In this document: positions 2,429-61,174 of the stretch, piece by piece
Position numbering within the stretch: the first letter of the stretch is position 1
Layout of the letters: the number at the start of each line of letters is the position of its first letter
Virus record (IMG/VR): IMGVR_UViG_3300029984_000001
Coordinates: 199,572-263,571 of that record
Direction: 5' to 3' (one strand)
Length of the DNA: 64,000 bases
The notes under the pieces: generated by a model
Told to the model about the DNA's origin: nothing
The model's input: the letters and a program-made list of their open reading frames with translations, nothing else
Database searches by the model: none
Program-made: the position numbers and the translations under genes

Positions 2429-3298
2429 CTACCCTAAATATATTTTTTCAGAATAATTCATTAATTGATTTTGAATGTGTTGTTCAATATTTACTATGAA
2501 TGTATCTCCATCTTTACTACAAACTTGTATTTGTCTGCCACCTTCTAACATTGTATAAGAATTATTTAATAAATCAAATGATTCTTTGAAGAAATAAAGA
2601 TTAGCAGATTCTTGTTTTATATATTCTATTATTTGATTATTTGTAACTGGAATTAATATACCAGCATCATTTTCTTGTACTACAAATTTATTTCCAATAT
2701 TCTCTTTACCATGAGCCAATAAAGCATTTTCTGTTACACCAACAATAGAGGTGGTATAGGCTCTCTTATGTGAAGGGTATATAACTCTATCCCAAGTAAT
2801 AATAGTTATATTTTCTACTTCAGCCCCTCTTGAAGTTTGATTGACAGTACCTAATGCTCTTAACGAAAAAGATGGTTTATCTCCATCCATTAAATCTAAA
2901 TTAAATGCTTCACCGTAAGAATTATTCGAACCTTTTATATGAGCTTTGATATCATTACCGTCCACCCAAAACTTAACTATTTTATTACATCTTAAAGATG
3001 GTTCTATAATTTGCTGTCTAGAAATTTCTTTAGACATTGGATGACCTTCTTCTCCATATAAGTTTCCAGTTGCTACTAATTCAGTCAATCTATCAGCTTT
3101 TAAAGCTGGTTTCATTTCCTTATCTGAATAGAATCTTTTGTTTCTATTTTGTATATTCATATCTTGTAATATAACTTCAGCAGTTACTCTTCTACCATCA
3201 TTATCAACTATCTTCATTTCTGTCTCATGCATACATGTAGCAGTTTCTATAATAACATACCCTATTTTCTTATCATAATTATTATAAGTCATACCCAT
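2429..3298 (-). CDS. Prohead core protease (T4 gp21-like)
   Basis: Motifs LQDMNIQNRNKRFY, YGEEGHP (His), SFSLRALG (Ser), WDRVIYPS. Confidence 0.9.
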   Translation of the reverse strand: MGMTYNNYDKKIGYVIIETATCMHETEMKIVDNDGRRVTAEVILQDMNIQNRNKRFYSDKEMKPALKADRLTELVATGNLYGEEGHPMSKEISRQQIIEPSLRCNKIVKFWVDGNDIKAHIKGSNNSYGEAFNLDLMDGDKPSFSLRALGTVNQTSRGAEVENITIITWDRVIYPSHKRAYTTSIVGVTENALLAHGKENIGNKFVVQENDAGILIPVTNNQIIEYIKQESANLYFFKESFDLLNNSYTMLEGGRQIQVCSKDGDTFIVNIEQHIQNQLMNYSEKIYLG

Positions 3299-3371
3299 AA
3301 ATAATAATCCTCCTTTATATATTCTTATTATTATAGTTCAATATCTAAAATCGTTAGGTATCTATATAGGG

Positions 3372-3383
3372 AACTATATAATA
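3372..3383 (+). promoter_or_regulatory. Late promoter AACT-N6-TA
   Basis: aact atataa ta upstream of SD aaagggg. Confidence 0.65.
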
Positions 3384-3410
3384 ATATAAACTTTGAAAGG
3401 GGATGATTTA

Positions 3411-5429
3411 ATGGCTAAATATGATGATATACAAAGCCGAATATATAACCTAAAAACTAAATCTATTATCAATGAAGAGATGGATATGTCAATGATAAAT
3501 TATAATCTATATAATAATTCTAATCTAGGAAAGACAATATCAAAAATAACAACCGATCAAATCAATTCTAATAATTTATTAGAAAGTATATGTAATATAA
3601 TTATAAAGTCTCAAATTTCAATACAAGAACAAAAAGAGATAGGAGATTCTTTAATAAGGACATTACCTAATATACAAAAAATAAAGAAGTATAAAAATTC
3701 ATTTTACGAGGTTGCAAATAAAATTAATAATCCTTTAATAAAGGATAAAGTTAATCTTCTTATAGAATGCGATCGTATAATAAATAATCAAGAAAAATTA
3801 GTAGAATATTCTAAATTCGACTTTATATTTGAAAACTATTTTTTAAATAATGATTTGGAAACAATAGTTGTTGAATCTTGTGATGTAATCGATTCTTATA
3901 AAATGAAATATGAAACTAAACTAAGTGTTGCATTAGAAAATATAATATATAATATGGATGCTTTAAAAAAAGAATATGATAAAAAAGAATTAGTTGAATT
4001 GGTATATGAATACTTCATTTCTTCTAAAGAATATAAAAAAGAGAATGTAGATAAAGTATTAAGGGAAGCTTCTATTGAATTAGATAATATTTTAATTGAT
4101 TCTATACTAGAAGGAAAAAATATTAATAAAATAAAACAAAAATTTAAAGACATGAGACATGATGGTCCTATTACTAAAGAGGCTTTAGAAAAAACAATAC
4201 ATAAAGCTTATATAGATTCTGGTCAAAATATAATTGAAGACTTACCTAATCTTTTGGGTTGTGTAAGATTGGCTTTAGTATTAATAATAGCTTCATATAG
4301 TCTACCTTTAGGGATTATAGTAGGAATTGCTGATCATATAATAAGTTTAAAATTAAATAGAGTTGATATAGAAAAGAGTATAAAGTATTATAAAAGAGAA
4401 AAAACCAAAATAGAAAGTAAAAAATACTCTGTTAGTAATGCTGCAACTGTTAAAAAGTATGATCAATTAGATAAAGAGTATGATAATAGTATAGAAAAAC
4501 TAGAGATATATAGAGATACATTATATACAGATAAAGAAAATGAATATAGAATGATGAGTGAATCTGCTGAAAATGATCCTATTAGATTACAAGCAGAATT
4601 TATTACATTGTGCGAGACAGTAGAATCTTATTGTAAAAATTCTGATATACAAGATAAACTATATAATTATATTTATAAAATAGATGACTCTAGGGATATA
4701 AATATATTATTTAATTCATTATCTGAATCGGCTGTTGCAAGTTCTAGTCTTTTTGATTTCGATACAATCTTTAGAAATTTACAGAATCCAAATATATCTG
4801 GGTCATTAATAAATAATATATCTAAATATAAAAGAAAGCCTAAACTAGATGTAAATAAAGATGATGTTGATATCCTAGAAGAGATGATCTATTATAACAA
4901 TATTTATGATATATTATCTGAAAATACTATAACAGCAAAGGCTAAATTATTAGCTATAAATGCTAAGAATAAAGTTCAAAGTCTGACTGATAAAGAAAAA
5001 ATGATATCAAATAGAATAGATACCACTTTTGATAAAATGAAATCTGATTTAGAGAATAAGAATACTAATCAAAATAGAGAGGCTGTAATTAAGGGTACAA
5101 TACTACCTTCATTATCATCTCTACTTAAATTAGTATTGGGTTCATATTTAGTTGCAATTGCTGTTACTCCATTATTAGGAATAATAGGATTTGTAGGGGG
5201 TATAGCGTTATCTAAATCTGCTACAGATAAAGAACGTAGAAATATATTGGAAGAAATAGATGTCCAATTGGAATTGGTTGAAAAGAAAATATCATTAGCA
5301 GAAAATTCTAATGATATGAAATCTCTAGAGCAATTATTAAGAATACAAAAAAGATTAAAACAAGAAAGACAAAGAATTGTTTATCATGGTTCTGCAAAAA
5401 ATTATTATGTAGCTAAACACAAAGATTAA
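3411..5429 (+). CDS. Putative virion internal protein with two hydrophobic hairpin plus coiled-coil modules
   Basis: In the head operon; hydrophobic segments LALVLIIASYSLPLGIIVGIA and LVLGSYLVAIAVTPLLGIIGFVGGIAL; several [IL]xE sites. Confidence 0.6.
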   Translation: MAKYDDIQSRIYNLKTKSIINEEMDMSMINYNLYNNSNLGKTISKITTDQINSNNLLESICNIIIKSQISIQEQKEIGDSLIRTLPNIQKIKKYKNSFYEVANKINNPLIKDKVNLLIECDRIINNQEKLVEYSKFDFIFENYFLNNDLETIVVESCDVIDSYKMKYETKLSVALENIIYNMDALKKEYDKKELVELVYEYFISSKEYKKENVDKVLREASIELDNILIDSILEGKNINKIKQKFKDMRHDGPITKEALEKTIHKAYIDSGQNIIEDLPNLLGCVRLALVLIIASYSLPLGIIVGIADHIISLKLNRVDIEKSIKYYKREKTKIESKKYSVSNAATVKKYDQLDKEYDNSIEKLEIYRDTLYTDKENEYRMMSESAENDPIRLQAEFITLCETVESYCKNSDIQDKLYNYIYKIDDSRDINILFNSLSESAVASSSLFDFDTIFRNLQNPNISGSLINNISKYKRKPKLDVNKDDVDILEEMIYYNNIYDILSENTITAKAKLLAINAKNKVQSLTDKEKMISNRIDTTFDKMKSDLENKNTNQNREAVIKGTILPSLSSLLKLVLGSYLVAIAVTPLLGIIGFVGGIALSKSATDKERRNILEEIDVQLELVEKKISLAENSNDMKSLEQLLRIQKRLKQERQRIVYHGSAKNYYVAKHKD

Positions 5430-5448: not shown

Positions 5449-6294
5449 ATGGGATATCTTATGAATCTATTAGAAGTAAAGAGAACAACAGGAAATGGTG
5501 AAGATGAAGATTTAAATGATGGTCAATCAAATAATGATGATGATAGTAATTATAATCTAGATGATGAAACTAATAATGATCCTGAAGGGCAACATGATAT
5601 AGCCGACGGTTCAAATAATTATAACTTAGAAGATGAAACCAATACAAATCCAGAAGATGATAATGGGGGTAATCCTCCTATTGATGATAATAATGTTCCA
5701 GCTTCAGATAATGATCCCGAACACGATACAGTAGATGGTACTAACAACTATAATTTAGAAGATGAAACTAATAAAGATCCAACTCCAGAAGATGATAACG
5801 AAATAGATGATACAAATGCTCCTGATAATAATGATACTAATAACTATAACTTAGAAGATGAAACAAATGGTGAAGACAATACATCATCTGATACAGGTAA
5901 TTTAGATGGAACAGATGGGCAACCTGTAGATCCAGATGCTAAAATAAAAGAAATTGAACAATCTATAGGAACTCTCAATCCAGAGCAATTAAAAGTACAA
6001 AATGTGAATTTGAAGAAGCAATATATAGAACTATATAATAATTGTAGTAATATAATAATGAGATTGAATGATGTTAATAAAAAGAGTGAAACTGAAGAAG
6101 GTTTAGCTTTCGCAATACAAAGTGTTCAAGATCTTAAAAGTATTATATATGATTATCTTATTCATACATATGATACAAAAACATTTGTACAAAATTCTGT
6201 TAATTACACCGAGTATTTAGTTACTCTTAATTCGGTAAATAAATTATTAAATAATCTTAATACTAACAAAAATGTAAATAATGTTAAAAAGTAA
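5449..6294 (+). CDS. Putative prohead scaffold/core protein (acidic, repetitive)
   Basis: D/N-rich N-terminal half, helical C-terminus, immediately upstream of the capsid gene. Confidence 0.5.
   Translation: MGYLMNLLEVKRTTGNGEDEDLNDGQSNNDDDSNYNLDDETNNDPEGQHDIADGSNNYNLEDETNTNPEDDNGGNPPIDDNNVPASDNDPEHDTVDGTNNYNLEDETNKDPTPEDDNEIDDTNAPDNNDTNNYNLEDETNGEDNTSSDTGNLDGTDGQPVDPDAKIKEIEQSIGTLNPEQLKVQNVNLKKQYIELYNNCSNIIMRLNDVNKKSETEEGLAFAIQSVQDLKSIIYDYLIHTYDTKTFVQNSVNYTEYLVTLNSVNKLLNNLNTNKNVNNVKK
5548..5868 (+). repeat. Four copies of NYNL[DE]DETN (aaYtataaYYtagaWgatgaaac)
   Basis: Copies start near 5548, 5617, 5746 and 5842. Confidence 0.85.
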
Positions 6295-6326: not shown

Positions 6327-6338
6327 AACAATATAGTA
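6327..6338 (+). promoter_or_regulatory. Late promoter AACA-N6-TA for the capsid gene
   Basis: aaca atatag ta followed by SD taaggagg. Confidence 0.75.
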
Positions 6339-6368
6339 AATTATTAAAGAATATAAGGAGGAATTACA

Positions 6369-8129
6369 ATGGCTACAGGAGGAACAAGAAAAAAGAAAAT
6401 AGTATCTGATGGTTATAGCAATAGTCCGTTTGCAGGAATTTCAGGACAATTTAGTAAAGTTGCTAAGGAAATTCAAATACAAGAAGGTGTCGATTTATTT
6501 GGGCAACCTGCATTAGCATTAAATAATCCTAAAGTAGTAAATACTTTAGAAAGTTTCTTTATAGAAGGTACTTATGATCAAAAATTATATGATGGTACTA
6601 CTAGAGGATATAATGCAAGAGCTTTACAAGAATATAAAAATGATATGAAAGAGTTATTTAAAAATGACGTTGAAGCTATTACTGAGTATACAGCAATGAA
6701 TTCAGTGAACCCTATTGTTACAACAGGATTAGCAATGCATAAATTAATTGCATTAAGAAATATATTTAGACAAGGTGTAATTCAAACTAACGTTGCAGTT
6801 GAACCTAGATTTACAATCAAGATGCAACATAGATATTTAATAACTCCAGATGGTAAAGAATTAGATTTAGTATTAGACCAAAATAAATTATCTGATGCTT
6901 TCAATTCAATTAACCCTAAGAGAGTTGTAACTTTAGAATTTACTGGAAATACTTGTAATACTGCTACTTTTGTTCCTGGTAAAAGATTAGTGGAATTATG
7001 TGGTGGTGTATTAGGTAGAGACAATCTAAATACAGATACCGAAATTCATGCTATTTACATAGAAGTACCAGATGAAGCTGCTATTAAAGCAGGTACTCTT
7101 GGAGCTACTAAAATAGAAAAGATTAAAAAGAGAATTCAATTTACTCCTCAATATGGTCCTAATAATATTACAGGGTTTAATCAACCTTTAGATTTAACTA
7201 AATTCGTTGAAGGTGCAACCGATTTATTTTCAGGTACATTAACTAATAATGAAATGATGTTAATAAGTGGATTAGGAATTATAAAGAAAGTAGATATTAG
7301 AATTCAATTAGATCCTTCTAATGGTTTACTATCAACATGTAGAGCAGGTTGGAGACATGATGAAACATTGGTCACTATTCCAAATGCTAACCCAATGAAT
7401 ATTCCAATATCTCCTGAAGAAATTAAGGATATCCAAGCTATGTATGGAATAGATCAACTATCTATGTATATGTCTATAATTAATGATGTATTAGGAAATG
7501 TTAAGGATGATAGTATCAGAAAAGATTTATATGCTTCTTTTGATAATATGAATGCGTCTGAAAGAAAAGTTAGTTGGTTTGATTTCGAACCAAGAGAAGG
7601 ATATAATAGAGATCATGTAAGTTGGAGATATTCTTCATTCATGGATATATTTGATACATTTGTAACAGATTTATTATATATCTTGAATGATGAAGACGTT
7701 ACAGTATCTATATTTGGTAGACCAGATGTAATTAGAAAGATTACTCCTACTGATTACAGCTACCAAGCACCATCTAGTATAGGACCAGTAAGTCTTGAAT
7801 ATACTAGAACTATTGCTACATCTGACAACAGAGTATACAACTTTGTATCTTCTCAAAAGTTAGGAGCTAGTAATGACTTAACAGTTATTCTAAATCCAAA
7901 TAATACAGATAGAATTATATATAGAGTTTACGATTATCAATTCTACGTTTCAAATGAAATCAAGAATGCTGATAATCATGTATTACCAGGTGTTCATGCA
8001 TTTGAAAGATTCAAATTCTTAGAATATCAACCAGTACAAGGTAAGTTCAGAGTATTTAATCCATCTGGTAGAAATGATGATAATACAAAATATCAAGATC
8101 AACTTAAAGATTTAAGAGATATAGCATAA
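6369..8129 (+). CDS. Major capsid protein (T4 gp23-like precursor)
   Basis: AITE|YTAMNSVNPIVTTGLAMHKLIALRNIF...VIQT resembles the gp23 post-cleavage segment; own promoter, strong SD and terminator; position after protease and scaffold. Confidence 0.75.
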   Translation: MATGGTRKKKIVSDGYSNSPFAGISGQFSKVAKEIQIQEGVDLFGQPALALNNPKVVNTLESFFIEGTYDQKLYDGTTRGYNARALQEYKNDMKELFKNDVEAITEYTAMNSVNPIVTTGLAMHKLIALRNIFRQGVIQTNVAVEPRFTIKMQHRYLITPDGKELDLVLDQNKLSDAFNSINPKRVVTLEFTGNTCNTATFVPGKRLVELCGGVLGRDNLNTDTEIHAIYIEVPDEAAIKAGTLGATKIEKIKKRIQFTPQYGPNNITGFNQPLDLTKFVEGATDLFSGTLTNNEMMLISGLGIIKKVDIRIQLDPSNGLLSTCRAGWRHDETLVTIPNANPMNIPISPEEIKDIQAMYGIDQLSMYMSIINDVLGNVKDDSIRKDLYASFDNMNASERKVSWFDFEPREGYNRDHVSWRYSSFMDIFDTFVTDLLYILNDEDVTVSIFGRPDVIRKITPTDYSYQAPSSIGPVSLEYTRTIATSDNRVYNFVSSQKLGASNDLTVILNPNNTDRIIYRVYDYQFYVSNEIKNADNHVLPGVHAFERFKFLEYQPVQGKFRVFNPSGRNDDNTKYQDQLKDLRDIA

Positions 8130-49886: not shown

Positions 49887-50915
49887 CTAAACAAATGATA
49901 AATCATTAGGCATTTCATAACCTTCTTTAGCAGTCTTAGTTATTAATCTAAGAGCAACACCTTTATTTTGTCTATTTCTAGCTTTAATAGCAGTCAAGTA
50001 CGCTCCATTATAAGTTTGAATAGCAGATAAACAAGTCTTTAGATCTTCTACATCATATGTGCAAGCTCTTTGAGCATCCCCATTTTCAACAGATCCTGTT
50101 TCTTTACCAAGACTTTTCTTTCTACCATCTACTATACTGATTAATTTATTAATGAATGTTTTAACAGATTTATACGCTTTCATTGCATCAGTTTTATCTT
50201 GTTTAGCTGATGTAATTTCTGATACGATATTATCTGCATTTATAGTAACATTAACTTTAGAATCTTCACCCTTTCTAAATAATTTAAATAATTCTTTAGA
50301 ATATTCAGAAGATGATAATTCACTTTGACCTAATGCAGCTCCTCTTATTTTTGCTGATATTTCTTCAGACTTAGTATCTTTATGTGAAGATAAAATTTCT
50401 GAATCACTTCTTGTAAAGTATTTAGATAACTTACTTTCAGCTTTATCTATACCATTTTCAGATATACTGAAATTGAATCCTTTGTATTCAACCCCTACTG
50501 TACTTGCTGACTTAATTTTATCTCCATATTTCTTTACGAAAGCTTTATCATTCATGACGAATCTATTAATCATCATAATAAATTTATCAAATAACACTTT
50601 TATTTTCTTTCCTATAGAAATAAAAAAGTTTTTAACCTTTTCTAAAAATCCACCATCACCGAATGCTTCATTAACAGGCATTTCTACTCTATTGATAGAA
50701 AAATATTCTAATTCTTTTAAACCACAAGATTCACATATATCAAAATATTCTTCTTCAGTGAAAGCATTAATAGCTTCAGTACCTTCCATTGTAGGTTCAT
50801 AATGAAACTCTATACCTTGTACATCTGCAAATTCTCTTTGAATTGCTTCATCTGAAATATCTATAGGACCACTATTAGCATTTTCATTAAATATCATTGA
50901 ACTGTATCTTCCCAT
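49887..50915 (-). CDS. Internal head protein paralog 3
   Basis: VNE|AFGDGGFLEKVKNFFISIGKKIKVLFDKF...NDKAFVKKY. Confidence 0.7.
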   Translation of the reverse strand: MGRYSSMIFNENANSGPIDISDEAIQREFADVQGIEFHYEPTMEGTEAINAFTEEEYFDICESCGLKELEYFSINRVEMPVNEAFGDGGFLEKVKNFFISIGKKIKVLFDKFIMMINRFVMNDKAFVKKYGDKIKSASTVGVEYKGFNFSISENGIDKAESKLSKYFTRSDSEILSSHKDTKSEEISAKIRGAALGQSELSSSEYSKELFKLFRKGEDSKVNVTINADNIVSEITSAKQDKTDAMKAYKSVKTFINKLISIVDGRKKSLGKETGSVENGDAQRACTYDVEDLKTCLSAIQTYNGAYLTAIKARNRQNKGVALRLITKTAKEGYEMPNDLSFV

Positions 50916-50997: not shown

Positions 50998-52140
50998 TTA
51001 AGCTACTACTACTTCTAATGTATCTAGAGTTTCTAAAGTTTCATCATAAGCAGATTCTGCTAATGCATCTAAATAAACTTGTTCATTCATTTTAGATTTG
51101 GCAACTACTTTTGTGAATAGTGCTTTACATTGAGCAATATGCATTTTTACAAGACCAATATAAGCTCCATTTACCATATTATTAGCTGTTTGATTAACAG
51201 AAACTGTTCTACTAAATGTATTTAGTTTCTTAGTGTCACTAGAATTACCTGAAGCTGAACTAGTTCCTTTAAATGATGCAATTTCTATATTACTATTCTT
51301 TTCTGAAGATAATTTCCCTTTAGCTGAATCTATTTCAGATAACAACTTCTTGAAGAACTCTCCATTTTTCTTGTTAGAATCTTCTAATGTTTTGACTATT
51401 TTAGTAGTACCAAGTACTTCATTAACTTGTTTAGTCATTGAATCTGTTACAGATTCAAAACTATCTTTATTATCAAAGTAATCATTTTCTAAATCTTTCT
51501 TAAAGCTAGATCTAGTTGCACCAGACACTATTGAACTTAATAGAGATTCTAAGAAACTTCCATCATTTATTTCTTCATCTCTTTTCTTAAGAGCATCCCC
51601 ATTCATTCCATTTATTGAAGATAATGCACCAGCAGCTTCACCATCAAATTTACCAAATGGTATAGCTGTTAAACTTAATTCTTTCTTAAGAACTTTGAAT
51701 TTAAAGCTACCTTTATAACTCTTAGAATTACTATTAAAAGTATTTACATGTTTCTTATAGAACTTATTATAATCTCTAGTTAGGAAAGAAGAGATTTTAA
51801 CTTTAAGTGCTTCATATAAAGACTTAATCTTTTGCCATGCTTTCATAACCATAGTTTTAAGTTTTGATAAGACATCACCAAAACCTTCTGTTACTACAAC
51901 AATTTCAGCAGCTTCATTAACTAAACCCTCTTTTTCTAATTGTTCTTTTTTGAATGTAGCACCTAATTCATTGAACTCTTTTTGCATTGAGTCGTCGAAT
52001 GAGACTCTTTCATTTGTATATGATTCACCTATTAGTCTTAAGCAAGCACCTGCACTATAATCGAAACCTTCTATTACAGGTACATCTGTGTTGTCATTAA
52101 TACCATTTTCATTAAAAATATTAGAACTATATCTTCCCAT
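50998..52140 (-). CDS. Internal head protein paralog 2
   Basis: VTE|GFGDVLSKLKTMVMKAWQKIKSLYE...RDYNKFYKKH. Confidence 0.7.
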   Translation of the reverse strand: MGRYSSNIFNENGINDNTDVPVIEGFDYSAGACLRLIGESYTNERVSFDDSMQKEFNELGATFKKEQLEKEGLVNEAAEIVVVTEGFGDVLSKLKTMVMKAWQKIKSLYEALKVKISSFLTRDYNKFYKKHVNTFNSNSKSYKGSFKFKVLKKELSLTAIPFGKFDGEAAGALSSINGMNGDALKKRDEEINDGSFLESLLSSIVSGATRSSFKKDLENDYFDNKDSFESVTDSMTKQVNEVLGTTKIVKTLEDSNKKNGEFFKKLLSEIDSAKGKLSSEKNSNIEIASFKGTSSASGNSSDTKKLNTFSRTVSVNQTANNMVNGAYIGLVKMHIAQCKALFTKVVAKSKMNEQVYLDALAESAYDETLETLDTLEVVVA

Positions 52141-52171
52141 ATTAATTGTCCTCCTTTTATATTTTCTAATT

Positions 52172-52183: not shown

Positions 52184-52201
52184 AATTGAATAACTATCAG
52201 A

Positions 52202-53347
52202 TTATGCATTTAGGAATTCTAAGGATTCATAAACAGCATTTTCTTCAATAGCATCCAATAAAGTTTGTTCTGTAAATTTAGATCTAGATACAACTTTAGT
52301 AAATACAGATTTACATTGAGCTATATGCATCTTGATTAGAGAAATATACTCTCCATTTATAATATTATTAGCAGTTTGATTAACAGAAACTATATTAGAG
52401 AATAATTCTAATCTCATTGAATCTATAGGATGAGAATCTTTTAAATAAACACTATTAGTATTATTTTTATCTTGACCAAATGTTGAGTTTTTCCATTCAT
52501 GTCTTTCATCTGTTGTATCATTAGATTTATTCAAAGTAGACTTCATTGAATCTATTTCAGATAATAGTTTTTTGTAATAATCATTATTAGATTTTTGAGC
52601 TTTATTTAAATTCACTATTATATCTTTAGTACCCAATACTGTTTGCACTTCCTTTATAATAGCATCTGATAATTGTTCATGGTCATCTTTGTCTTCAAAT
52701 AATTGACTATATACTTCTTTTTTATAATCAGATCTTGAACACCCTAAAAGTGATTCTAAATAAGAACCATCTGATATTTTTTCTTTTTCAGATTTAATTT
52801 CTTCTTCTTTTTTGTTTTCACATTTCTTTAAAGTAGTATGAGCCTTAGATTCAAAACTACCATATTTTAAAGCACTTAAATCTAAAGTAGATTTAGGCAT
52901 TTTAAAACTATATTTACCTTTAGTATTCTTTGCATAATTACTAAAAGTATTTTGATGTTTCTTATAAAACTTATTATAATCTCTAGTTAAGAAGGCTGAT
53001 ATTCTAACTTTTACAGCTTCATATAAAGACTTAATCTTTTGCCATGCTTTCATAACCATTGATTTAAGTTTTGACTTTATATCAGCAAAACCTTCTGTAA
53101 CAATTTCTATCTTAGCAGCTTCTGTAAACATTCCTTTAGCTTCTAAATCTGCTTTTGCAATTTCAGCAGCAATTTCATTCATTTCAGATTTCATAGATTC
53201 ATCAAACACAGATAGTTCTTGTTGACTAGCTTCTGCAATTATTCTTAGATAAGCTCCTGGATCACTACCATATCCTTCTATTACAGGAACTTCTTCCTCA
53301 TTATAACGTCCTATAGAAGTGGTATTACCTCTTAATAAATGTCCCAT
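52202..53347 (-). CDS. Internal head protein paralog 1
   Basis: VTE|GFADIKSKLKSMVMKAWQKIKSLYE...RDYNKFYKKH. Confidence 0.7.
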   Translation of the reverse strand: MGHLLRGNTTSIGRYNEEEVPVIEGYGSDPGAYLRIIAEASQQELSVFDESMKSEMNEIAAEIAKADLEAKGMFTEAAKIEIVTEGFADIKSKLKSMVMKAWQKIKSLYEAVKVRISAFLTRDYNKFYKKHQNTFSNYAKNTKGKYSFKMPKSTLDLSALKYGSFESKAHTTLKKCENKKEEEIKSEKEKISDGSYLESLLGCSRSDYKKEVYSQLFEDKDDHEQLSDAIIKEVQTVLGTKDIIVNLNKAQKSNNDYYKKLLSEIDSMKSTLNKSNDTTDERHEWKNSTFGQDKNNTNSVYLKDSHPIDSMRLELFSNIVSVNQTANNIINGEYISLIKMHIAQCKSVFTKVVSRSKFTEQTLLDAIEENAVYESLEFLNA

Positions 53348-53362
53348 TATATTTTACCTCCT

Positions 53363-54412
53363 TTAAAATAAACTATTACCATCATCTTCATCCGAATCTC
53401 CGTCATCATTTAATTTAGCTGGAGCTTGATCAATAATATCATCAGCTTTAAATTTAATAGATGATTCTTTTTTAGATTCAGCAGATGCTTTATTGTCGGC
53501 AGATTTCATATCTATTGCAACATGATTTGCAATCTTTGCAAATTTCTCTGCAATTGCGTGTTGTTTAGATGCAATTTCTTTTCTTTTTACAGGATCTATT
53601 GATGGGTTTGATTGAACTCTATAAGCATTTGCTTGTAGTAACTCAGCCTGTAATTCAAAGTAATCACTAATCTTGGTTCTTACATGAAAGAAGAAGAATA
53701 TCATCTCCCTCATCATAGGAATAATATTCATTAGGATTGCAATTAAAGCTGCACCACCAAGAACCCCTATAGCAGCACTAGTACCTAATAATCCTTTTTC
53801 TTTAGAATATCCTGAAATAATATAAGATAATGATTTTTGTACATCACCTTTATCGCAAGAGTTATTAAACTTTTCAAGATTCTTTAATAGTAAATGATCT
53901 TTTGTTTTATTCAAAGCAACTTTATCTAATTCTATATCAAAATTATCAGCATTAGGTGACTTTATCATTTCTACCGAGGTAGCTATTAATAATGATGTAG
54001 CAGATACAATTGAAAGTACAATCGAATTATATAATACCATAGGTAGTTCTATATTCAACATATAACCTTTCATAAAGAGATTTTTATTCTCTTCCATATT
54101 TTGAATTGCTTTGTAAATAGTATTAACAGAATCTTGACTTCCTTTGAATTCTTTTATTAATCCTGATATTATATCTAAAGAATCTAGAGTTGAACTATAT
54201 CCACTATATGATGTAATGTCTCCTTTACTCTTCTCTATATCACCAAAATCAATATTTTCAAATTTCTCACTTATAAGTTTATGATACAATCTATCACATA
54301 ATGAACTTATGGCAGAATGTTCTTCAGCTTCATTCATCGATGTAATTACATTTAACGTTTCATCATCGAAAATATCAAAGTGTTCATTTATAGCAACTTC
54401 ATATATACCCAT
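53363..54412 (-). CDS. Putative virion protein with a hydrophobic segment
   Basis: Leader MGIYEVAINE; LLGTSAAIGVLGGAALIAILMNIIPMM. Confidence 0.6.
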   Translation of the reverse strand: MGIYEVAINEHFDIFDDETLNVITSMNEAEEHSAISSLCDRLYHKLISEKFENIDFGDIEKSKGDITSYSGYSSTLDSLDIISGLIKEFKGSQDSVNTIYKAIQNMEENKNLFMKGYMLNIELPMVLYNSIVLSIVSATSLLIATSVEMIKSPNADNFDIELDKVALNKTKDHLLLKNLEKFNNSCDKGDVQKSLSYIISGYSKEKGLLGTSAAIGVLGGAALIAILMNIIPMMREMIFFFFHVRTKISDYFELQAELLQANAYRVQSNPSIDPVKRKEIASKQHAIAEKFAKIANHVAIDMKSADNKASAESKKESSIKFKADDIIDQAPAKLNDDGDSDEDDGNSLF

Positions 54413-54427
54413 ATCGAATCCCCTTTC

Positions 54428-56308
54428 TTATCTTATTTTAGACATAAGATTTATAATCTTTTTATAATCATTACCTTTATCTTCTCTCTCTAATGATCTA
54501 AATGCCATTTCTTCGTAAAGATCATCTCCAGTATCAAAGATAAATTTAGCAACTTCATTATTCTCATCTATAATACAGAAACACATTAAGTTATATGATT
54601 CCATTATAGGTCTAATTATTTTTGGATCTTCTAAATCAATATCTTCCATTTTCTTTAGATATTCTGCTTCTTCTTGAGTTATAGTTAAAGATGTAATTGC
54701 AGTAGCATCATTAATTGATCCGATAGTTCTATTGATTCTACTTTTAATTCCTCTTCTTTCTAATACTTTCCAAAGTTTAGAAGATGATCCTTTTCTTGAT
54801 TGAGAAAGAGCATCCAATTTAGCTCTATCAATAGCAAATAAGAAATCTCTACAGAATGATATTTCTCTAGTAGTAGCTTTTATCAAACCTATTAAGAAAT
54901 GTTTATCTACATGCTTAATGGTGAGCCTTTTTAATATATCATCTGAATTAACAGGATATAATTTAGCCTTAACTCCTATAACAGTTTGAGATTGTATTGG
55001 TCTACCATTATCCCCTTTAGATATGTAATTTACTATCATAGTAGTAGGAACCAATTCATTTGGTTTCTTAACATCATTATCTAAAAGTTGATTCTTTAAG
55101 TAATCAATTCTATTTCTTACTACATCAGCATCAAATCTAGACTTGTCTAAATTCATTTTATCTGCAAATTTTTCATCTTCTCTTCCATCTCTCTTTTCTT
55201 TATAATTTTGATTTAATTTATCTTGATCTTTTTGGTAATTAAATTTAGATAATTGATTATTATAATCTCTTACATCATTTTCAATATCTTTATTAAATTT
55301 ATTCACAGCTAATTGATGAGTTCTATCAGATTGAGATGTTTGATTATTCATTTTCTCTCTATCATTATCCATTCTTTCTTGATCTAATGCATTTCTGGTA
55401 TCAGATTCCATCCTTTTAAATTCGAAATCATTAGCATCTTTATTCACTTGATAATCTGACCCAGCATTTTTATAAGTCATATCAAAACCAGAATTAGTTG
55501 TTTTAATCATTATATCTTTTTCAGCTCTGTCTACAACTAAAGCGTAATCTGGGTTACTACTATAATAACCAACATCATATGATATACCATGTGCAGTTTG
55601 TCTTATATCTCCATTAGGGTCTCCAATTGCTTCAGTGACAGCTTTTTTATTTTTACCAATATTCATATATTTTGGGTCTGTATCTATGATACTGTCTAGA
55701 TAATCTAATTCTTCCATATCTGAATCTGTTAGTTTTTTATGTTTCTTTGATTTAGATTCATTTAATATATATGACTCATTTAAAGAATTTTTAGGTTTAA
55801 TGATTAAGTAGTCGGCTAGAGAAGATTCTTCTCTGATACTATTAGGTAAGTAATTGCTAAGGTTTCTTAAATCATTAGAATATTTTACATATAATTCTTC
55901 ATTATCAACCATAACAGCACCTTCTAATACTAAGTGATCCATCATGTTCATAAATTTATCTATTGTCATAGATCCATCTAATTTTAAATTAGTATGGAAA
56001 TTTTTAAGGTATGTAATTCCATCTTCAGCATTTGATATAGACAAAGCACTAAATAACATTTGAAGCATACTTACAGCTTTACGTTCCATTGCTTTTGAAA
56101 ACATAGAAGCATTGTCTATTGTCATACCTCTAGATACTACACAAGGAAATACTAAAGTTAAATTAGCTGTAGCCGCAGCTATTGATCTAAAACTTTTACC
56201 TTGGGATCTATTACTAATTGCATCTATAGCATCAGCATTTTTCAATTCTTCTAACATATCCATAGCATCTCTAATTACTGTTTCATGTATCATTTTACAA
56301 TAATTCAT
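54428..56308 (-). CDS. Putative virion structural protein with central charged insert
   Basis: Late promoter; leader MNYCKMIHE; LNE and VTE sites before a D/K/N/Q-rich coiled region. Confidence 0.6.
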   Translation of the reverse strand: MNYCKMIHETVIRDAMDMLEELKNADAIDAISNRSQGKSFRSIAAATANLTLVFPCVVSRGMTIDNASMFSKAMERKAVSMLQMLFSALSISNAEDGITYLKNFHTNLKLDGSMTIDKFMNMMDHLVLEGAVMVDNEELYVKYSNDLRNLSNYLPNSIREESSLADYLIIKPKNSLNESYILNESKSKKHKKLTDSDMEELDYLDSIIDTDPKYMNIGKNKKAVTEAIGDPNGDIRQTAHGISYDVGYYSSNPDYALVVDRAEKDIMIKTTNSGFDMTYKNAGSDYQVNKDANDFEFKRMESDTRNALDQERMDNDREKMNNQTSQSDRTHQLAVNKFNKDIENDVRDYNNQLSKFNYQKDQDKLNQNYKEKRDGREDEKFADKMNLDKSRFDADVVRNRIDYLKNQLLDNDVKKPNELVPTTMIVNYISKGDNGRPIQSQTVIGVKAKLYPVNSDDILKRLTIKHVDKHFLIGLIKATTREISFCRDFLFAIDRAKLDALSQSRKGSSSKLWKVLERRGIKSRINRTIGSINDATAITSLTITQEEAEYLKKMEDIDLEDPKIIRPIMESYNLMCFCIIDENNEVAKFIFDTGDDLYEEMAFRSLEREDKGNDYKKIINLMSKIR

Positions 56309-56333
56309 TTTTATTCCTCCTAACTGATTAAAT

Positions 56334-56345
56334 TAGTAATATGTT
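56334..56345 (-). promoter_or_regulatory. Late promoter AACA-N6-TA
   Basis: Minus strand aaca tattac ta. Confidence 0.7.
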
Positions 56346-56673: not shown

Positions 56674-56685
56674 AACATTTCAATA
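56674..56685 (+). promoter_or_regulatory. Late promoter AACA-N6-TA
   Basis: aaca tttcaa ta. Confidence 0.7.
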
Positions 56686-56707
56686 ATAAGAAAGGAGGTT
56701 ATATATT

Positions 56708-57666: not shown

Positions 57667-60222
57667 ATGTCAGATATTATTTCTTCAGATATATATGCAA
57701 TATCTGAAATGGTTCTAGATCTAGAAAAAAAGTTTATAACAGATGCTACTGAAGATGTACTTATGGTAAGTACATATGGATACATGGGTTCTAATTTTGC
57801 TAAGATTATGAAGAATAGTGTTAGAATGGCTAGTGAATGGGGTAACGAATGCTTGTTACTCAAAGCCAAATTTGATAGTACTATATTATCAAAAGCGATA
57901 GAACTTGAGATAGGTTCTATAAGTGCTACACCTTCTATAATGAATATAATGATTGGATTTGTAGAAAATGAATTAATATCTGCTATGGTAAATAATCAAT
58001 TAATTATAAGTAGAAATTGTTTATTAAATATTGGAGATTTTGAATTTCATCTAGATCATGATTTATTAATTCAGATGGAAAAACTAATTACAGGAGAATA
58101 TATCTATACCGCTAGATATATAATGAACGAATTCTCTCCGAATTTTACTAAGATAGATAACCCTTATTTATCATCTCCACTTAGATTATTACAAGATAAT
58201 GATAATTTTATTTTTATAAATTGTGATATAATTCAAACTACTCTTAAATTTATAGATGCTCCTATTATATCTAATAATATATTAGAAAATAAAACAGTTG
58301 ATTTTGATTTTGATAAACAATTAGCATCCTTTGAAGTTATGGTTATGTCTAATAATGAAAAAATAAATCTTAAACCGATATATGAAGGTATGCCTATAGA
58401 AAATACATTATATTGTTTTTATAATTATCTAGATAGTGATACTATCAGAATAAAGTTTGATCCAGATTCATATAATCCATCTAATGGTGATACAATAGTG
58501 ATAAGAGTTCAATCTACTACAGGAGATAATGGTAACTTACCTTTTAGTTTAGATGTAACAGTAACTCTAGATGATGAAACTGATATTGTAGATTATAAAG
58601 GGTTATCATGTTTAATAAAAACATCGGATGCTACTAATGGATCTAATGGTAAAACCATGGATGAATTGAAATCTATATTACCAAAGGAATCTTTATCTAG
58701 AGGAATAATTGCGACAGAAGCAGATATAGATACTTTCTTTAATAATTTGAACGAGGATAATAAATTGATATTCAAAAAGAAAAGACATAATCAACAAGAA
58801 AGATTATATTATGCTTACTTCTTAGCAAAAGATTCTAATGATAATGTGATACCAACAAATACAATAGATTTAGAAATACTAGAAGAAGATTTTATTATAT
58901 CAAATAATAAAATTATTATAGATCCAAATTCAAGAATAGTTTATAATAGAAATACAAAATTAGGTACTATAAAAAATAAAGAAGAAGCTACTGATGAATT
59001 TATATATACTACACCATTTTCTACTGTTATAAATAATAAATTATTATATATGTCACATTATTTAAATATAGTAGATAATTCATATAAGTTTAATTACAGT
59101 TATATAAATAATAAATCATTTATTCAGTTTATATCTACTAAGATGACTATACAAAGAAATTTCTTAATAGATAGTAAATATAGAATTACTTTATCATTAA
59201 CCCAAAATACAAATGTAGATGTATCATTGATAGAATTAGATTCTAATAATAATATAATAAGTTGTAAAATAAAACCAGTGTTAGTTTTATCTCCAGATTC
59301 TACACATAATTATTATGTATATGGTGAAGTAATTGGATATGACTCTAATACATTCACATATCAAGTAGAATTTAATATAGATTCTGATAATAAGATGAAT
59401 GAATCTAATCAAATATTATTAAAAAATTTACATTTAGGAAATGGTACTACAACCACTTCTATATTTATGGATATTGAAACTAAAATGTCTATATATATGT
59501 ATGCAGATTTAGGATTAGATTATGGTTCTAATAATATGGTCCCAGATTTATATAATAGTAATTATACTTTATGTAATATTTATACAACTATAGATAATGT
59601 AGAATTGTTTTTTAATTTTTCTAGTATAATAAATACTGGGATTACTGTATATAAAAATAGTTCAGATAAAATAGTATATAAGATCAAAGGATTACCTGTT
59701 GTTAGAAAAAGTTATATACAAGATATAGATAGATGTAATAAACTAATTGATTCTTTATATTATAGAAAAGTATATATAGATACTGCTTTAGATTTTATAG
59801 AAAATGGTTTTGAAATAGATTTTAAGTTCTATAACACATACGGTCCTTCTCAAACATTAAATATTGGGTATGATGGATTGGAGTTATTGAATTCCACAAA
59901 TTTATCATTAAAATTCATAGTAAAATTAAAAAATGGTGTTGATATAAATATAATAAAGAATATGAAACAAGACATTAAACTATATATAGAAGACATAAAT
60001 AAAGAGAAGGTATCTGAAAATATGTCTAATATTAATACATTAATATCAAATAAATATAGTACAGATATAGAATTTTTTGATTTTATTAGTATTAATAATT
60101 ATGATGCTACTTATAAGTATATAGTCAAGAAAAATACAGATTTAATTGAACAAGTACCTGAATTCCTATGTATAAATTTATCCGATGATATTGAACCTGA
60201 TATAACTATTAAGAGTATTTAA
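57667..60222 (+). CDS. Baseplate wedge protein (gp6-like)
   Basis: STTGDNGN, ATNGSNGKTMDELK, RGIIATEADI. Confidence 0.75.
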   Translation: MSDIISSDIYAISEMVLDLEKKFITDATEDVLMVSTYGYMGSNFAKIMKNSVRMASEWGNECLLLKAKFDSTILSKAIELEIGSISATPSIMNIMIGFVENELISAMVNNQLIISRNCLLNIGDFEFHLDHDLLIQMEKLITGEYIYTARYIMNEFSPNFTKIDNPYLSSPLRLLQDNDNFIFINCDIIQTTLKFIDAPIISNNILENKTVDFDFDKQLASFEVMVMSNNEKINLKPIYEGMPIENTLYCFYNYLDSDTIRIKFDPDSYNPSNGDTIVIRVQSTTGDNGNLPFSLDVTVTLDDETDIVDYKGLSCLIKTSDATNGSNGKTMDELKSILPKESLSRGIIATEADIDTFFNNLNEDNKLIFKKKRHNQQERLYYAYFLAKDSNDNVIPTNTIDLEILEEDFIISNNKIIIDPNSRIVYNRNTKLGTIKNKEEATDEFIYTTPFSTVINNKLLYMSHYLNIVDNSYKFNYSYINNKSFIQFISTKMTIQRNFLIDSKYRITLSLTQNTNVDVSLIELDSNNNIISCKIKPVLVLSPDSTHNYYVYGEVIGYDSNTFTYQVEFNIDSDNKMNESNQILLKNLHLGNGTTTTSIFMDIETKMSIYMYADLGLDYGSNNMVPDLYNSNYTLCNIYTTIDNVELFFNFSSIINTGITVYKNSSDKIVYKIKGLPVVRKSYIQDIDRCNKLIDSLYYRKVYIDTALDFIENGFEIDFKFYNTYGPSQTLNIGYDGLELLNSTNLSLKFIVKLKNGVDINIIKNMKQDIKLYIEDINKEKVSENMSNINTLISNKYSTDIEFFDFISINNYDATYKYIVKKNTDLIEQVPEFLCINLSDDIEPDITIKSI

Positions 60223-60233
60223 ACATTACAATA
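60222..60233 (+). promoter_or_regulatory. Late promoter AACA-N6-TA
   Basis: aaca ttacaa ta. Confidence 0.7.
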
Positions 60234-60253
60234 ATTTTAAGGAGGAATGAATT

Positions 60254-61174
60254 ATGAAAAATCCTGTACTTGACATTTTAAAACTTCAAAAAGAAAATAT
60301 TGAAAAAGAACGAATATTAGAAAGTAAAAATAATTATGATCAAAGATTATCCGAGGAACAACAAGATATTGAAAGATATAATCATTATAAAGAATCATAC
60401 GGATTTATGGGTATGCAACCAAAACAATCTATATTTAAATCTAAGGTAGAAAAAGAATTATTATCTGAAGGTTTAAATAGAATATTCTCTAAATGTGTAA
60501 AGAGTTTATTGTATGAAAATGCAGCTTTATTAAAAAAACATTTAGTCAGCTCTTTTGTAAATGAATCAGGTGTTGATAATCTTATGAATAAATTTTCTGA
60601 AGAGTCATATTTATTATCAGAATTAACAAGATTAGTAGTAGAGTATTCTGAGATAATATGTGAGAAAGCTAGAAATAATAAAGATGAAATTATAGATCCT
60701 ACTGATAAAGAAGACTTCTATGAGAAAATAGACAGTATTGCAGATGTAGGAGATGTGCAAGATACAGTAAAATTAAGAGTTGCTGATGCTTTTAATCAAT
60801 TCAATATAAATAATACAGAAAAGAAAAGAGATATTGAAAATATAATGATTCAGTCAAGAGAAAATATTAATGCTAATATGACTGAGGAGATTATGGAATA
60901 TACAAAAATGCAAAATAAACAAAAAGAAAATGAGATTAGGAATTCAAAGAAAACAATTTTTGAATCTATGATGTATAATATAATAGAATCATGTTATAAG
61001 GATAATGATTTAAAAGAAAAGTTTTTTGAAGAATCAGGTCTACCTGATTTTGATAAAATATCAGATCATTGTAAAATAATGTATGGATTTATGGAGATGC
61101 TTAATACAACTGGAGCACAACATTTATCTCCTGAATATATTAAGGAACAAGTTGATAATTTAAGAATTTTATAG
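60254..61174 (+). CDS. Putative virion (head) protein
   Basis: Late promoter; helical; many [ILVF]xE sites. Confidence 0.55.
   Translation: MKNPVLDILKLQKENIEKERILESKNNYDQRLSEEQQDIERYNHYKESYGFMGMQPKQSIFKSKVEKELLSEGLNRIFSKCVKSLLYENAALLKKHLVSSFVNESGVDNLMNKFSEESYLLSELTRLVVEYSEIICEKARNNKDEIIDPTDKEDFYEKIDSIADVGDVQDTVKLRVADAFNQFNINNTEKKRDIENIMIQSRENINANMTEEIMEYTKMQNKQKENEIRNSKKTIFESMMYNIIESCYKDNDLKEKFFEESGLPDFDKISDHCKIMYGFMEMLNTTGAQHLSPEYIKEQVDNLRIL

What the first reader, a model, noticed from the sequence alone, without database searches (positions are those of the whole stretch)
2429..61174. T4-type protease plus short leaders ending in [ILVF]xE: a candidate capsid-targeting and maturation code
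Seen: many late proteins start with a 9-18 aa leader ending in hydrophobic-x-E. Examples: MGYLMNLLE (5449), MPRYNANEIVNE (30956), MGIRFNLNE (internal start 32063), MFDIKCLSLNE (49818), MGRYSSMIFNE (50915), MGRYSSNIFNE (52140), MGIYEVAINE (54412), MNYCKMIHE (56308), and ...GYVIIE on the protease itself. The capsid protein has ITE at residues 104-106. Established: T4 gp21 cuts after [IL]xE and T4 internal proteins carry a 10-aa capsid targeting sequence; phiKZ gp175 prefers [SAG]xE. Inference: this phage combines AR9/phiKZ-like transcription with T4-like processing and has its own M[GP]x[YF]...NE loading tag.
Basis: partly seen in the sequence, partly recalled or inferred. Interest (0 to 1): 0.7.

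Follow-up and report, generated by a model that had tools for sequence, protein, structure and literature searches.

The report
Capsid protease cut sites, jumbo phage

Summary
As a bare pattern it means little. A third of all 300 proteins have [ILVFM]xE ending at residues 8-18.

Comparative data rescue a narrower claim.
- The capsid protein's ITE-106 is the only such site kept in 120/120 homologs. P1 is always E, P3 is always I/V/M/L/F, and P2 takes 13 different residues.
- The protease resembles T4 gp21 in fold (TM 0.72) and has invariant His86/Ser145/His177. It keeps IIE-18 and VTE-190 in predicted disordered segments.
- Eleven of 11 head-module orthogroups keep an N-proximal site, against 5 of 19 others.
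- Their first 110 residues hold about five times more conserved sites than elsewhere.
- Conserved Glu there has a conserved hydrophobic residue specifically at P3 (56% vs 18-31% at other offsets).

The most likely picture is T4-like [I/V/L/F/M]-x-E cleavage of multi-site N-terminal propeptides, as in phiKZ-type heads. The short leader is only the first fragment. A capsid-targeting role for M-G-R-[YF] leaders is plausible but untested. I rate it a new member of a known kind.

The parts
2429..3298 (-). Prohead maturation protease, 289 aa. Catalytic core is about residues 28-183. It has a disordered N-terminal extension, a disordered linker and a C-terminal domain.
   Evidence: Pfam S77 2.9e-10 and S80 5.7e-9. 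PHROG head maturation protease 1e-23. phmmer to T4 gp21 5JBL, E 1.7e-4. AF2 core pLDDT about 90; Foldseek 5JBL TM 0.72, rmsd 2.0. H86, S145 and H177 are invariant in 86 homologs.
3245..3253 (-). IIE, protease residues 16-18: candidate N-terminal self-cleavage site.
   Evidence: The motif is kept in 120/120 homologs with 9 different P2 residues. It lies in segment 1-27, where pLDDT is below 50. T4 gp21 has LIE-9 (PMC9026906).
2729..2737 (-). VTE, protease residues 188-190: candidate C-terminal self-cleavage site just after the catalytic core.
   Evidence: The motif is kept in 116/120 homologs with 8 different P2 residues. It lies in the disordered segment 184-242.
1620..2414 (-). Virion protein, homolog of AR9 g112, with LIE-15.
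   Evidence: PHROG virion structural protein 3.8e-17. AR9 g112 hit. LIE is kept in 3 phages. The flanks are equally conserved, also in AR9, PALS2 and LPJP1, so cleavage here is doubtful.
3411..5429 (+). 672-aa late head-module protein. N-terminal 22 residues end in INE.
   Evidence: Late promoter motif at 3372-3385. Orthologs carry VQE-22, ITE-22 and LNE-17.
5449..6294 (+). Acidic low-complexity protein just upstream of the capsid gene (scaffold-like). Leader MGYLMNLLE.
   Evidence: Orthologs begin MGFYRSLLHE, (M)GIYRYFLE and MAIYSNGIKRYVHE, each followed by an acidic tract. AR9, PALS2 and LPJP1 counterparts also have ..L/F-x-E before an acidic tract.
6369..8129 (+). Major capsid protein precursor, 586 aa, HK97 fold. 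Residues 1-106 form a helical propeptide.
   Evidence: PHROG major head protein 2.6e-17. AF2 pLDDT 77; residues 1-107 are helical. Best structural match is the Staphylococcus jumbo phage S6 capsid 7X30, Z 21.4.
6678..6686 (+). ITE, capsid protein residues 104-106: predicted maturation cleavage site (cut after E106).
   Evidence: It is the only [ILVFM]xE kept in 120/120 homologs. P3 is I65/V21/M17/L15/F2, and P2 takes 13 different residues. It aligns with ILQE|S (AR9), ILME|S (PALS2/S6) and IME|S (LPJP1). 7X30 models only 434 of 534 residues, and the aligned range starts at residue 93.
54428..56308 (-). Block gene A, 626 aa, homolog of AR9 g214 (minor virion structural protein). N-terminus MNYCKMIHE.
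   Evidence: PHROG virion structural 8.7e-22. Late promoter motif at 56332-56345. [IV]-x-E|T[VI] is kept in 5 phages.
53363..54412 (-). Block gene B, 349 aa, homolog of AR9 g215 (virion protein). Leader MGIYEVAINE.
   Evidence: PHROG virion structural 6.1e-25. [ILVFM]xE at the start of the conserved domain in 120/130 representatives. An aromatic residue lies 6 residues before the Glu in 83/88. In 41 of them the site is more than 100 residues from the N-terminus.
52202..53347 (-). Block gene C, 381 aa. First conserved site is VIE-24. Further conserved sites at 39, 50, 58, 76, 85 and 110.
50998..52140 (-). Block gene D, 380 aa. Leader MGRYSSNIFNE. Conserved sites at 11, 24, 39, 58, 76, 85 and 110. 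Own late promoter motif at 52170-52183.
49887..50915 (-). Block gene E, 342 aa. Leader MGRYSSMIFNE. Conserved sites at 11, 68 and 83. Own late promoter motif at 50939-50952.
48730..49818 (-). Block gene F, 362 aa. Leader MFDIKCLSLNE. Conserved sites at 11, 25, 44, 55 and 65.
47556..48728 (-). Block gene G, 390 aa. Conserved sites at 16, 30, 49, 53 and 75.

Best explanation
The window belongs to a 263.6-kb AR9-like jumbo phage of an uncultivated low-GC clade.

Its prohead protease (2429-3298) is an assemblin-fold serine protease of the T4 gp21 type. It most likely cuts after Glu in [I/V/L/F/M]-x-E.

Predicted substrates:
- the capsid protein, cut after E106, removing a 106-residue helical propeptide;
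- the protease itself, at E18 and E190;
- the two proteins encoded between the protease and the capsid gene;
- seven consecutive late head proteins (47556-56308). Their first 65-110 residues are propeptides carrying 3-7 conserved sites each.

Status of each step:
- Shown: the fold and family of the protease, and the conservation patterns.
- Inferred: cleavage itself.
- More weakly inferred: that the extreme N-terminus (M-G-R-[YF]..., aromatic at residue 3-4) helps load proteins into the prohead like the T4 capsid targeting sequence.
For: 1. Protease identity.
- Pfam S77 and S80 are both above cutoff.
- The AF2 core matches T4 gp21 5JBL at TM 0.72, rmsd 2.0 A.
- H86, S145 and H177 are invariant.

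2. Capsid protein.
- ITE-106 is the only site kept in 120/120 homologs of median 44% identity. P1 and P3 are fixed; P2 is free.
- The same site aligns in AR9, PALS2/S6 and LPJP1.
- The solved S6 capsid lacks about 90 N-terminal residues.

3. Protease termini. IIE-18 (120/120) and VTE-190 (116/120) lie in predicted disordered segments.

4. Orthogroup test. A conserved site by residue 30 occurs in 11/11 head-module and block groups against 5/19 others, Fisher p 8.7e-5. Terminase, helicase, GroEL, the nvRNAP subunit and primase have none.

5. Site density. There are 3.6 conserved sites per 100 aa in the first 110 residues of head-set proteins. The rest of those proteins has 0.77, and controls have 0.73 and 0.44.

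6. Position specificity. Of conserved Glu in those N-terminal regions, 40/72 have a conserved hydrophobic residue at P3. At P5, P4, P2 and P1'-P3' the figure is 18-31%. At P3 elsewhere it is 20-25%. Fisher p 2.6e-6.

7. Leader constraint.
- Paralogs D and E share 10/11 leader residues at about 25% overall identity, with 3 synonymous differences in the own-genome D/E pair.
- Orthologs keep MGR[YF] and [IV]F-x-E while the spacer changes in sequence and length.
- A third, unrelated late protein starts MGRY.

8. Precedent.
- The T4 CTS is MKTYQEFIAE. Residues 4 and 7 serve targeting; residues 8 and 10 serve processing.
- phiKZ gp93 is cut at SLE-13, and SPN3US gp53/gp54 have identical 15-residue N-termini.
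Against: - There is no direct evidence of cleavage: no proteome or N-terminal data for this phage or, in the papers read, for AR9-like phages.
- The generic motif is common and not enriched in late genes.
- In genes A, B and the g112 homolog the residues after the Glu are as conserved as those before it. The motif could be part of the fold.
- In 41 B-family representatives the site is far from the N-terminus, so it is not a 'leader' there.
- Five non-head orthogroups also keep an N-proximal motif, including a PC4-like DNA-binding protein.
- Head-set membership of C-G rests on synteny, paralogy and late promoters. A profile comparison with AR9 g216 was not significant.
- The ortholog tests use only 2-4 relatives, and the head set was partly chosen after seeing the motif.
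Confidence: 0.6

Rival explanations
1. The leaders are chance. In an AT-rich proteome rich in I, L, N, K and E, a hydrophobic-x-Glu tripeptide near the N-terminus is expected in about a third of proteins. The reader picked out examples.
For: - 98/300 proteins have the motif at residues 8-18.
- Late genes 31/109 vs early genes 51/154.
- The two-feature rule hits 58 proteins with 52 expected.
- 30956 is an NTPase/endonuclease fusion with no virion link.
Against: - 120/120 conservation at the capsid-protein and protease sites, with free P2.
- 11/11 vs 5/19 orthogroups.
- P3-specific excess, p 2.6e-6.
- Fivefold higher site density in head-protein N-termini.
Confidence: 0.12
2. The conserved hydrophobic-x-Glu positions are structural. 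They are amphipathic helices of scaffold-like or coiled-coil N-terminal domains and the first helix of the B and A folds. They are not protease sites. Only the capsid protein, and perhaps the protease, is processed.
For: - Flanks on both sides of the Glu are conserved in A, B and the g112 homolog.
- The capsid propeptide and many of these N-termini are predicted helical or acidic.
- The B motif is internal in 41 homologs.
Against: - A heptad pattern would put hydrophobic residues 3-4 positions before a charged residue. The excess is at offset 2 only: 56% vs 31% at P4 and 18% at P5.
- The first sites in D and E are separated from the conserved body by variable linkers of changing length.
- The protease sites are in disordered segments.
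Confidence: 0.18
3. The first 9-13 residues form a portable capsid-targeting sequence, a T4-CTS analogue (M-G-R-[YF]... or aromatic at residue 3-4), that is sufficient to load proteins into the prohead and is then cut off.
For: - D and E leaders are 10/11 identical at about 25% overall identity, with synonymous changes. They co-vary within each genome.
- MGRY also starts an unrelated late 158-aa protein.
- MGIY, MGFY and MAIY start the scaffold-like protein in relatives.
- The B leader matches the T4 CTS at M1, Y4, I8 and E10, the positions T4 genetics found important.
Against: - Position 2 and the P2 'N' are not conserved.
- Gene C has lost the first site.
- An aromatic at residues 2-5 occurs in 39% of all proteins.
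- Targeting in phiKZ-like phages is attributed to much longer propeptides.
Confidence: 0.3

Closest known systems
T4 prohead protease gp21 (MEROPS/Pfam S77) with the capsid targeting sequence of internal proteins IPI-III and Alt
   Same: - Same fold (5JBL is the top hit) and a Pfam S77 hit.
- Inferred cutting after Glu with I/L/V at P3.
- A motif near the protease's own N-terminus: LIE-9 in gp21, IIE-18 here.
- Short N-terminal leaders shared by otherwise diverged head proteins.
- The B leader matches MKTYQEFIAE at positions 1, 4, 8 and 10.
   Different: - About 24% identity to gp21 over the matched core (structural alignment to 5JBL).
- The genome is AR9-like, not T4-like.
- Substrates have long multi-site propeptides rather than a single 10-20 residue CTS.
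- F and M are also accepted at P3.
- Nothing here is experimentally shown.
phiKZ gp175 / SPN3US gp245 / 201phi2-1 head maturation (Pfam S80), which processes inner-body and ejection proteins
   Same: - Jumbo phage with virion and non-virion RNA polymerases.
- Pfam S80 hit.
- A diverged second protease paralog (PMC5694885 abstract).
- Clusters of paralogous head proteins with long N-terminal propeptides that contain extra sites.
- Identical N-termini in paralogs, as with SPN3US gp53/gp54.
   Different: Those proteases prefer S/A/G at P3. Here P3 at the capsid-protein site is never S/A/G in 120 homologs, and the excess at P3 is of hydrophobic residues.
Bacillus phage AR9/PBS1 head module (g112-g118, g214-g217) and Staphylococcus jumbo phage S6/PALS2
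   Same: - Gene order is conserved around the protease and capsid gene, and around block A-B.
- The capsid-protein site aligns.
- AR9, BpSp and LPJP1 orthologs of B have ILIRE|D, VLINE|N and LLVE|S before the conserved body. g216 orthologs have AVIE|D and LFVE|D.
- The late promoter is AAC[AT]-N6-TAA, like AR9's AACA-N6-TA.
   Different: - Only 62/300 proteins hit AR9.
- The capsid protein is 19% identical to AR9's, but 35-84% identical to more than 120 metagenomic proteins.
- Block genes C-G have no detectable AR9 homolog.
HK97 delta domain (capsid-protein propeptide removed by the prohead protease)
   Same: About 100-residue helical N-terminal region directly before the N-arm of an HK97-fold capsid protein.
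   Different: Different protease family and cleavage motif.

Membership tests
Peptidase S77 (T4 gp21-type prohead protease) | Sequence match to the family model above its curated cutoff | tested here: met
   PF03420, 40.4 bits against a cutoff of 27, E 2.9e-10. All 120 listed homologs carry PF03420, except one annotated PF20034 only.
Peptidase S77 (T4 gp21-type prohead protease) | Assemblin-like fold as in the gp21 crystal structure | tested here: met
   AF2 core 28-183 has pLDDT about 90. Foldseek 5JBL prob 1.0, TM 0.71-0.72, rmsd 2.0. Herpesvirus proteases come next.
Peptidase S77 (T4 gp21-type prohead protease) | Catalytic Ser and His residues present | tested here: met
   H86, S145 and H177 are invariant in 86 homologs. 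GHP and FSLRALG align with the corresponding gp21 segments. Activity was not tested.
Peptidase S77 (T4 gp21-type prohead protease) | Cleavage after Glu with L/I at P3 | tested here: inconclusive
   Comparative support only: the capsid-protein site in 120/120 homologs and the P3-specific excess. No cleavage data.
Peptidase S80 (phiKZ gp175-type) | Sequence match above the curated cutoff | tested here: met
   PF20034, 35.9 bits against a cutoff of 23.4. About half of the listed homologs carry it too.
Peptidase S80 (phiKZ gp175-type) | Preference for S/A/G at P3 of x-E sites | tested here: not met
   P3 at the universally conserved capsid-protein site is I/V/M/L/F in 120/120. At the protease sites it is I/V/L. 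This is an inference from conservation, not from cleavage.
T4-type capsid targeting sequence (CTS) | Short N-terminal propeptide shared by otherwise dissimilar head proteins and ending in a protease site | tested here: inconclusive
   D and E share 10/11 leader residues. MGRY starts a third, unrelated late protein. M-[GA]-x-Y occurs on the scaffold-like protein and on B. The features are not specific proteome-wide.
T4-type capsid targeting sequence (CTS) | Leader is sufficient to direct a foreign protein into the prohead | not testable with these tools
   This needs a reporter-fusion packaging assay.
AR9/phiKZ-type jumbo phage transcription | Split multisubunit virion and non-virion RNA polymerase genes, with early and late promoter motifs | tested here: met
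   Homologs of AR9 g078, g145, g189 and g264 (virion RNAP) and g089, g105, g154, g226 and g270 (non-virion RNAP). The late motif lies upstream of 44 genes (3.6 expected) and the early motif upstream of 32.

The most novel reading that the evidence does not exclude
The extreme N-terminus of the head proteins may be a portable capsid-loading tag. Its features are M-G-R-[YF] or an aromatic at residue 3-4, then a hydrophobic-x-Glu cut site within about 10-13 residues. More than 120 capsid homologs, many on 200-340 kb contigs, suggest a large uncultivated clade of jumbo phages of low-GC bacteria would use it. If so, any protein carrying it would be packaged, trimmed and probably injected. That would make the clade's injected-protein repertoire predictable from sequence.
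Probability: 0.3. Interest if true: 0.55.

Novelty: new member of a known kind. Interest (0 to 1): 0.4.

Why it matters
Head maturation has been worked out for T4 and for the phiKZ group, but not, in the papers read, for AR9-like jumbo phages or for the large metagenomic clade this phage belongs to.

If confirmed, the inferred rule [I/V/L/F/M]-x-E gives three things. It gives the mature N-terminus of the capsid protein (Y107), which is useful for fitting cryo-EM maps. It gives a list of likely internal or ejected head proteins. It also gives a testable case in which a phiKZ-style head with many multi-site propeptides uses T4-style specificity.

The work also shows that such motifs cannot be called from a single proteome. 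Only conservation across orthologs separates signal from composition.

Tried and rejected
- Megablast of the head module against 50,697 phage records found nothing.
- The viral-contig scan returned only a 100% identical contig.
- The genome search on the relatives' records failed because they are not held.
- Complex prediction with protease 19-190 plus residues 1-32 of protein D gave no answer: score 0.05 against a mark of 0.32. This is evidence neither way.
- A profile comparison of the C/D/E family with AR9 g216 was not significant: prob 3.7%, E 0.012.
- The 9-mer TTAACTTTA upstream of D and E is not a general element (22 seen, 24.5 expected). The real late motif is AAC[AT]-N6-TAA[AT].
- The rule 'aromatic at residues 2-5 plus the motif' has no specificity.
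- 'MG' at the start as a tag was rejected, because position 2 varies among orthologs.
- Papers on the AR9, BpSp and DC4 virion proteomes and on SPN3US contain no cleavage-site data for AR9-like phages.
- A second capsid-propeptide site near E39 is not conserved.
- PHROGs and Pfam give no family for 3411-5429, 5449-6294 or block genes C-G.

Full report
WHAT THE WINDOW IS. The window is the last 64 kb of a single 263,571-bp contig. GC is about 25% and the genes have strong AGGAGG ribosome-binding sites. I called 300 genes. By blastp, 62 have homologs in Bacillus phage AR9. These include the split virion and non-virion RNA polymerase subunits, portal, tape measure, terminase and GroEL. Gene order matches AR9 around the protease and capsid gene (g112-g118) and around g213-g220. 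The capsid protein is only 19% identical to AR9's. It is 35-84% identical to more than 120 metagenomic proteins, many on 200-340 kb contigs. The phage therefore represents a large uncultivated clade related to AR9/PBS1, the Staphylococcus jumbo phages and Listeria phage LPJP1.

CHECK OF THE OBSERVATION. The pattern itself is weak. [ILVFM]xE ending at residues 8-18 occurs in 98/300 proteins. Shuffling each N-terminus gives 77 on average. The Asp control is raised too.

AAC[AT]-N6-TAA[AT] lies 25-70 nt upstream of 44 genes (3.6 expected). It matches the AR9 late consensus AACA-N6-TA. T[GA]TATATTAT lies upstream of 32 genes and resembles the AR9 early consensus. Propagating these along co-directional genes gives 154 early and 109 late genes. 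Of the 16 AR9-virion homologs that get a class, 15 are late.

Late genes carry [ILVF]xE at residues 8-18 in 31/109 cases and early genes in 51/154 (p 0.5). Adding 'aromatic at residues 2-5' does not help: 58 hits, 52 expected.

WHAT SURVIVES: THE CAPSID PROTEIN. P1 is E in 120/120. P3 is I, V, M, L or F in 120/120. P2 takes 13 different residues. P4 is mostly A or G. This is the signature of a recognition motif, not of general conservation.

The site aligns with ILQE|S in AR9, ILME|S in PALS2/S6 and IME|S in LPJP1. An AF2 model (pLDDT 77) makes residues 1-107 helical, with a helix spanning 83-107 that ends at the site. The HK97-fold body follows. The best structural match is the solved capsid of Staphylococcus jumbo phage S6 (7X30, Z 21.4). 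That entry models 434 of the 534 residues, and the aligned range starts at residue 93. This is consistent with loss of the N-terminal part at LME-78, but I could not see the first modelled residue.

THE PROTEASE. It passes both Pfam S77 (T4 gp21, 40.4 bits) and S80 (phiKZ gp175, 35.9 bits). By sequence it matches only T4 gp21 in the PDB. The AF2 core (residues 28-183, pLDDT about 90) superposes on 5JBL with TM 0.72 and rmsd 2.0 A; herpesvirus proteases come next. H86, S145 and H177 are invariant in 86 homologs.

Two motifs are near-universal. IIE-18 is kept in 120/120 homologs with 9 different P2 residues. VTE-190 is kept in 116/120. Both lie in segments predicted to be disordered (1-27 and 184-242). 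This fits self-processing at both ends. T4 gp21 has LIE-9 and is thought to be trimmed at both termini (PMC9026906).

THE HEAD PROTEINS. I recovered the same regions from closer relatives:
- R1, Logan SRR21285875;
- R2, a 94-kb JGI contig;
- R3, ERR13731097;
- R4, a 222-kb ENA contig;
- two more distant fragments.

The seven consecutive late genes at 47556-56308 all keep an N-proximal site:
- A: IHE-9.
- B: INE/INE/IQE-10.
- C: VIE/VIE/VLE-24.
- D: FNE/FNE/FAE-11, plus VIE-24.
- E: FNE/FTE/FNE-11.
- F: LNE/LNE/LKE-11.
- G: LSE/LSE/LAE-16.

The same holds for the 672-aa protein (INE/VQE/ITE-22) and the acidic scaffold-like protein (LLE, LHE, FLE, VHE).

An automatic test on 30 orthogroups with comparable N-termini found a conserved site by residue 30 in 11/11 head-module and block groups. 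In the rest it found 5/19. Terminase, helicase, GroEL, the nvRNAP subunit and primase had none (Fisher p 8.7e-5).

THE SITES ARE NOT LIMITED TO THE LEADER. In head-set proteins, conserved sites occur at 3.6 per 100 residues in the first 110 residues. The rest of those proteins has 0.77, and controls have 0.73 and 0.44. Protein D, for example, has sites at 11, 24, 39, 58, 76, 85 and 110. V83 and E85 are invariant across the C/D/E paralogs.

Controlling for Glu content and for conservation, 40 of 72 conserved Glu in these N-terminal regions have a conserved hydrophobic residue exactly two positions upstream. At the six neighbouring offsets the figure is 18-31%. At that offset elsewhere it is 20-25% (p 2.6e-6). 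A coiled-coil pattern would favour offsets 3 and 4, which are not raised.

I therefore read these N-terminal regions as multi-site propeptides. This resembles phiKZ and SPN3US inner-head proteins, whose long propeptides contain additional sites (PMC5694885). The difference is a T4-like hydrophobic P3.

THE TARGETING IDEA. D and E are about 25% identical overall but share 10 of the first 11 residues. In this genome the pair shows three synonymous differences across the shared codons, so the peptide rather than the DNA is being kept. Orthologs keep MGR[YF] and [IV]F-x-E while the three to five residues between them change. They change in parallel in the two paralogs of each genome.

A third, unrelated late 158-aa protein outside the window also starts MGRY. 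The scaffold-like protein starts MGYL, MGFY, MGIY or MAIY. The B leader MGIYEVAINE matches the T4 CTS MKTYQEFIAE at positions 1, 4, 8 and 10. T4 genetics assigns positions 4 and 7 to targeting and positions 8 and 10 to processing.

Against this:
- Position 2 and the 'N' at P2 are not conserved.
- C has lost the first site.
- In 41 of 120 B-family representatives the same motif lies 100-530 residues from the N-terminus.
- For A, B and the g112 homolog the residues after the Glu are as conserved as those before it.

I give the targeting role about 0.3.

MPRYNANEIVNE (30956) heads a P-loop NTPase, zinc-finger and endonuclease fusion. Its AR9 homolog is not a virion protein, and it has no promoter class. 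MGIRFNLNE (32063) is an internal ATG. It does have a good Shine-Dalgarno sequence and lies 34 residues before the part homologous to AR9 g233. Nothing links it to the head.

VERDICT. The finding is an extension of a known mechanism, prohead-protease processing at x-E sites, to an unstudied jumbo-phage clade. It comes with a concrete, testable specificity and substrate list. No cleavage has been observed. All support is comparative.

Noticed in passing
window 14425-15939 (+), 22978-23850 (-), 38773-39300 (+), and ten genes elsewhere in the genome: Thirteen proteins start with M-[KN]-x-F-M-x-R(-D/E). Of the 40 'FM.R' strings in the whole proteome, 13 sit at about residues 4-9. The proteins are mostly early-class and of unrelated families: HNH homing-endonuclease-like, an nvRNAP subunit homolog and an Mre11-like phosphatase. 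Relatives have the motif too (MKKFMTRDE, MKNIMTRD). It could be a second N-terminal tag or a conserved 5' mRNA element.
   Followed up: partly
window 3372-3385, 6327-6340, 56674-56687, 60222-60235 (+); 50939-50952, 52170-52183, 56332-56345 (-): A late-promoter-like motif, AAC[AT]-N6-TAA[AT], lies 25-70 nt upstream of 44 genes genome-wide (3.6 expected). It is the same type as the AR9 late consensus. An early-type motif, T[GA]TATATTAT, lies upstream of 32 genes.
   Followed up: yes
genome 184812-185465 (-), about 14 kb upstream of the window: A second, diverged protease paralog of 217 aa in the late class. It keeps KPSFSLRALG and YPSH but lacks the first catalytic His, so it is probably inactive. 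SPN3US-like phages also have a diverged protease paralog.
   Followed up: partly
window 30956-33574 (+), internal ATG at 32063: An 872-aa ORF joins a P-loop NTPase to a zinc-finger endonuclease that is homologous to the 238-aa AR9 g233. An internal ATG with GGAGG 8 nt upstream lies 34 codons before the g233-like part. This may be a gene fusion or a nested second product.
   Followed up: partly
genome about 80722-81006 (-), outside the window: A 94-aa ORF is 41% identical to capsid-protein residues 489-562, so it is a stray copy of the capsid C-terminus.
   Followed up: no
genome 188606-189082 (+), about 11 kb upstream of the window: A lone late gene with its own late motif sits among early genes. 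It encodes a 158-aa acidic protein starting MGRYTADNMY...SLEE. It is a candidate small packaged protein.
   Followed up: partly
window 9526-10111 (+) and 22978-23850 (-); relatives L016 13242-14111 and 19665-20717: The genome holds many HNH homing-endonuclease-like paralogs and fragments. In relative R2 the nvRNAP-subunit gene ends after 323 codons and is followed by such a gene. Insertion sites therefore differ between relatives.
   Followed up: no
window 53363-54412 (-) family: The B family has 861 representatives at E <= 0.001. About a third of the best 150 carry N-terminal extensions of 100-530 residues in front of the conserved [YF]xx[AIV][IVLM]xE[HY]FD start of the domain.
   Followed up: partly
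whole window: An IMG/VR contig (UViG 3300030114_000003, 143.9 kb) encodes a 100% identical B protein (window 53363-54412). Related capsid and protease proteins are labelled Paraclostridium sp. and Bacilli bacterium MAGs, a hint at the host group.
   Followed up: no
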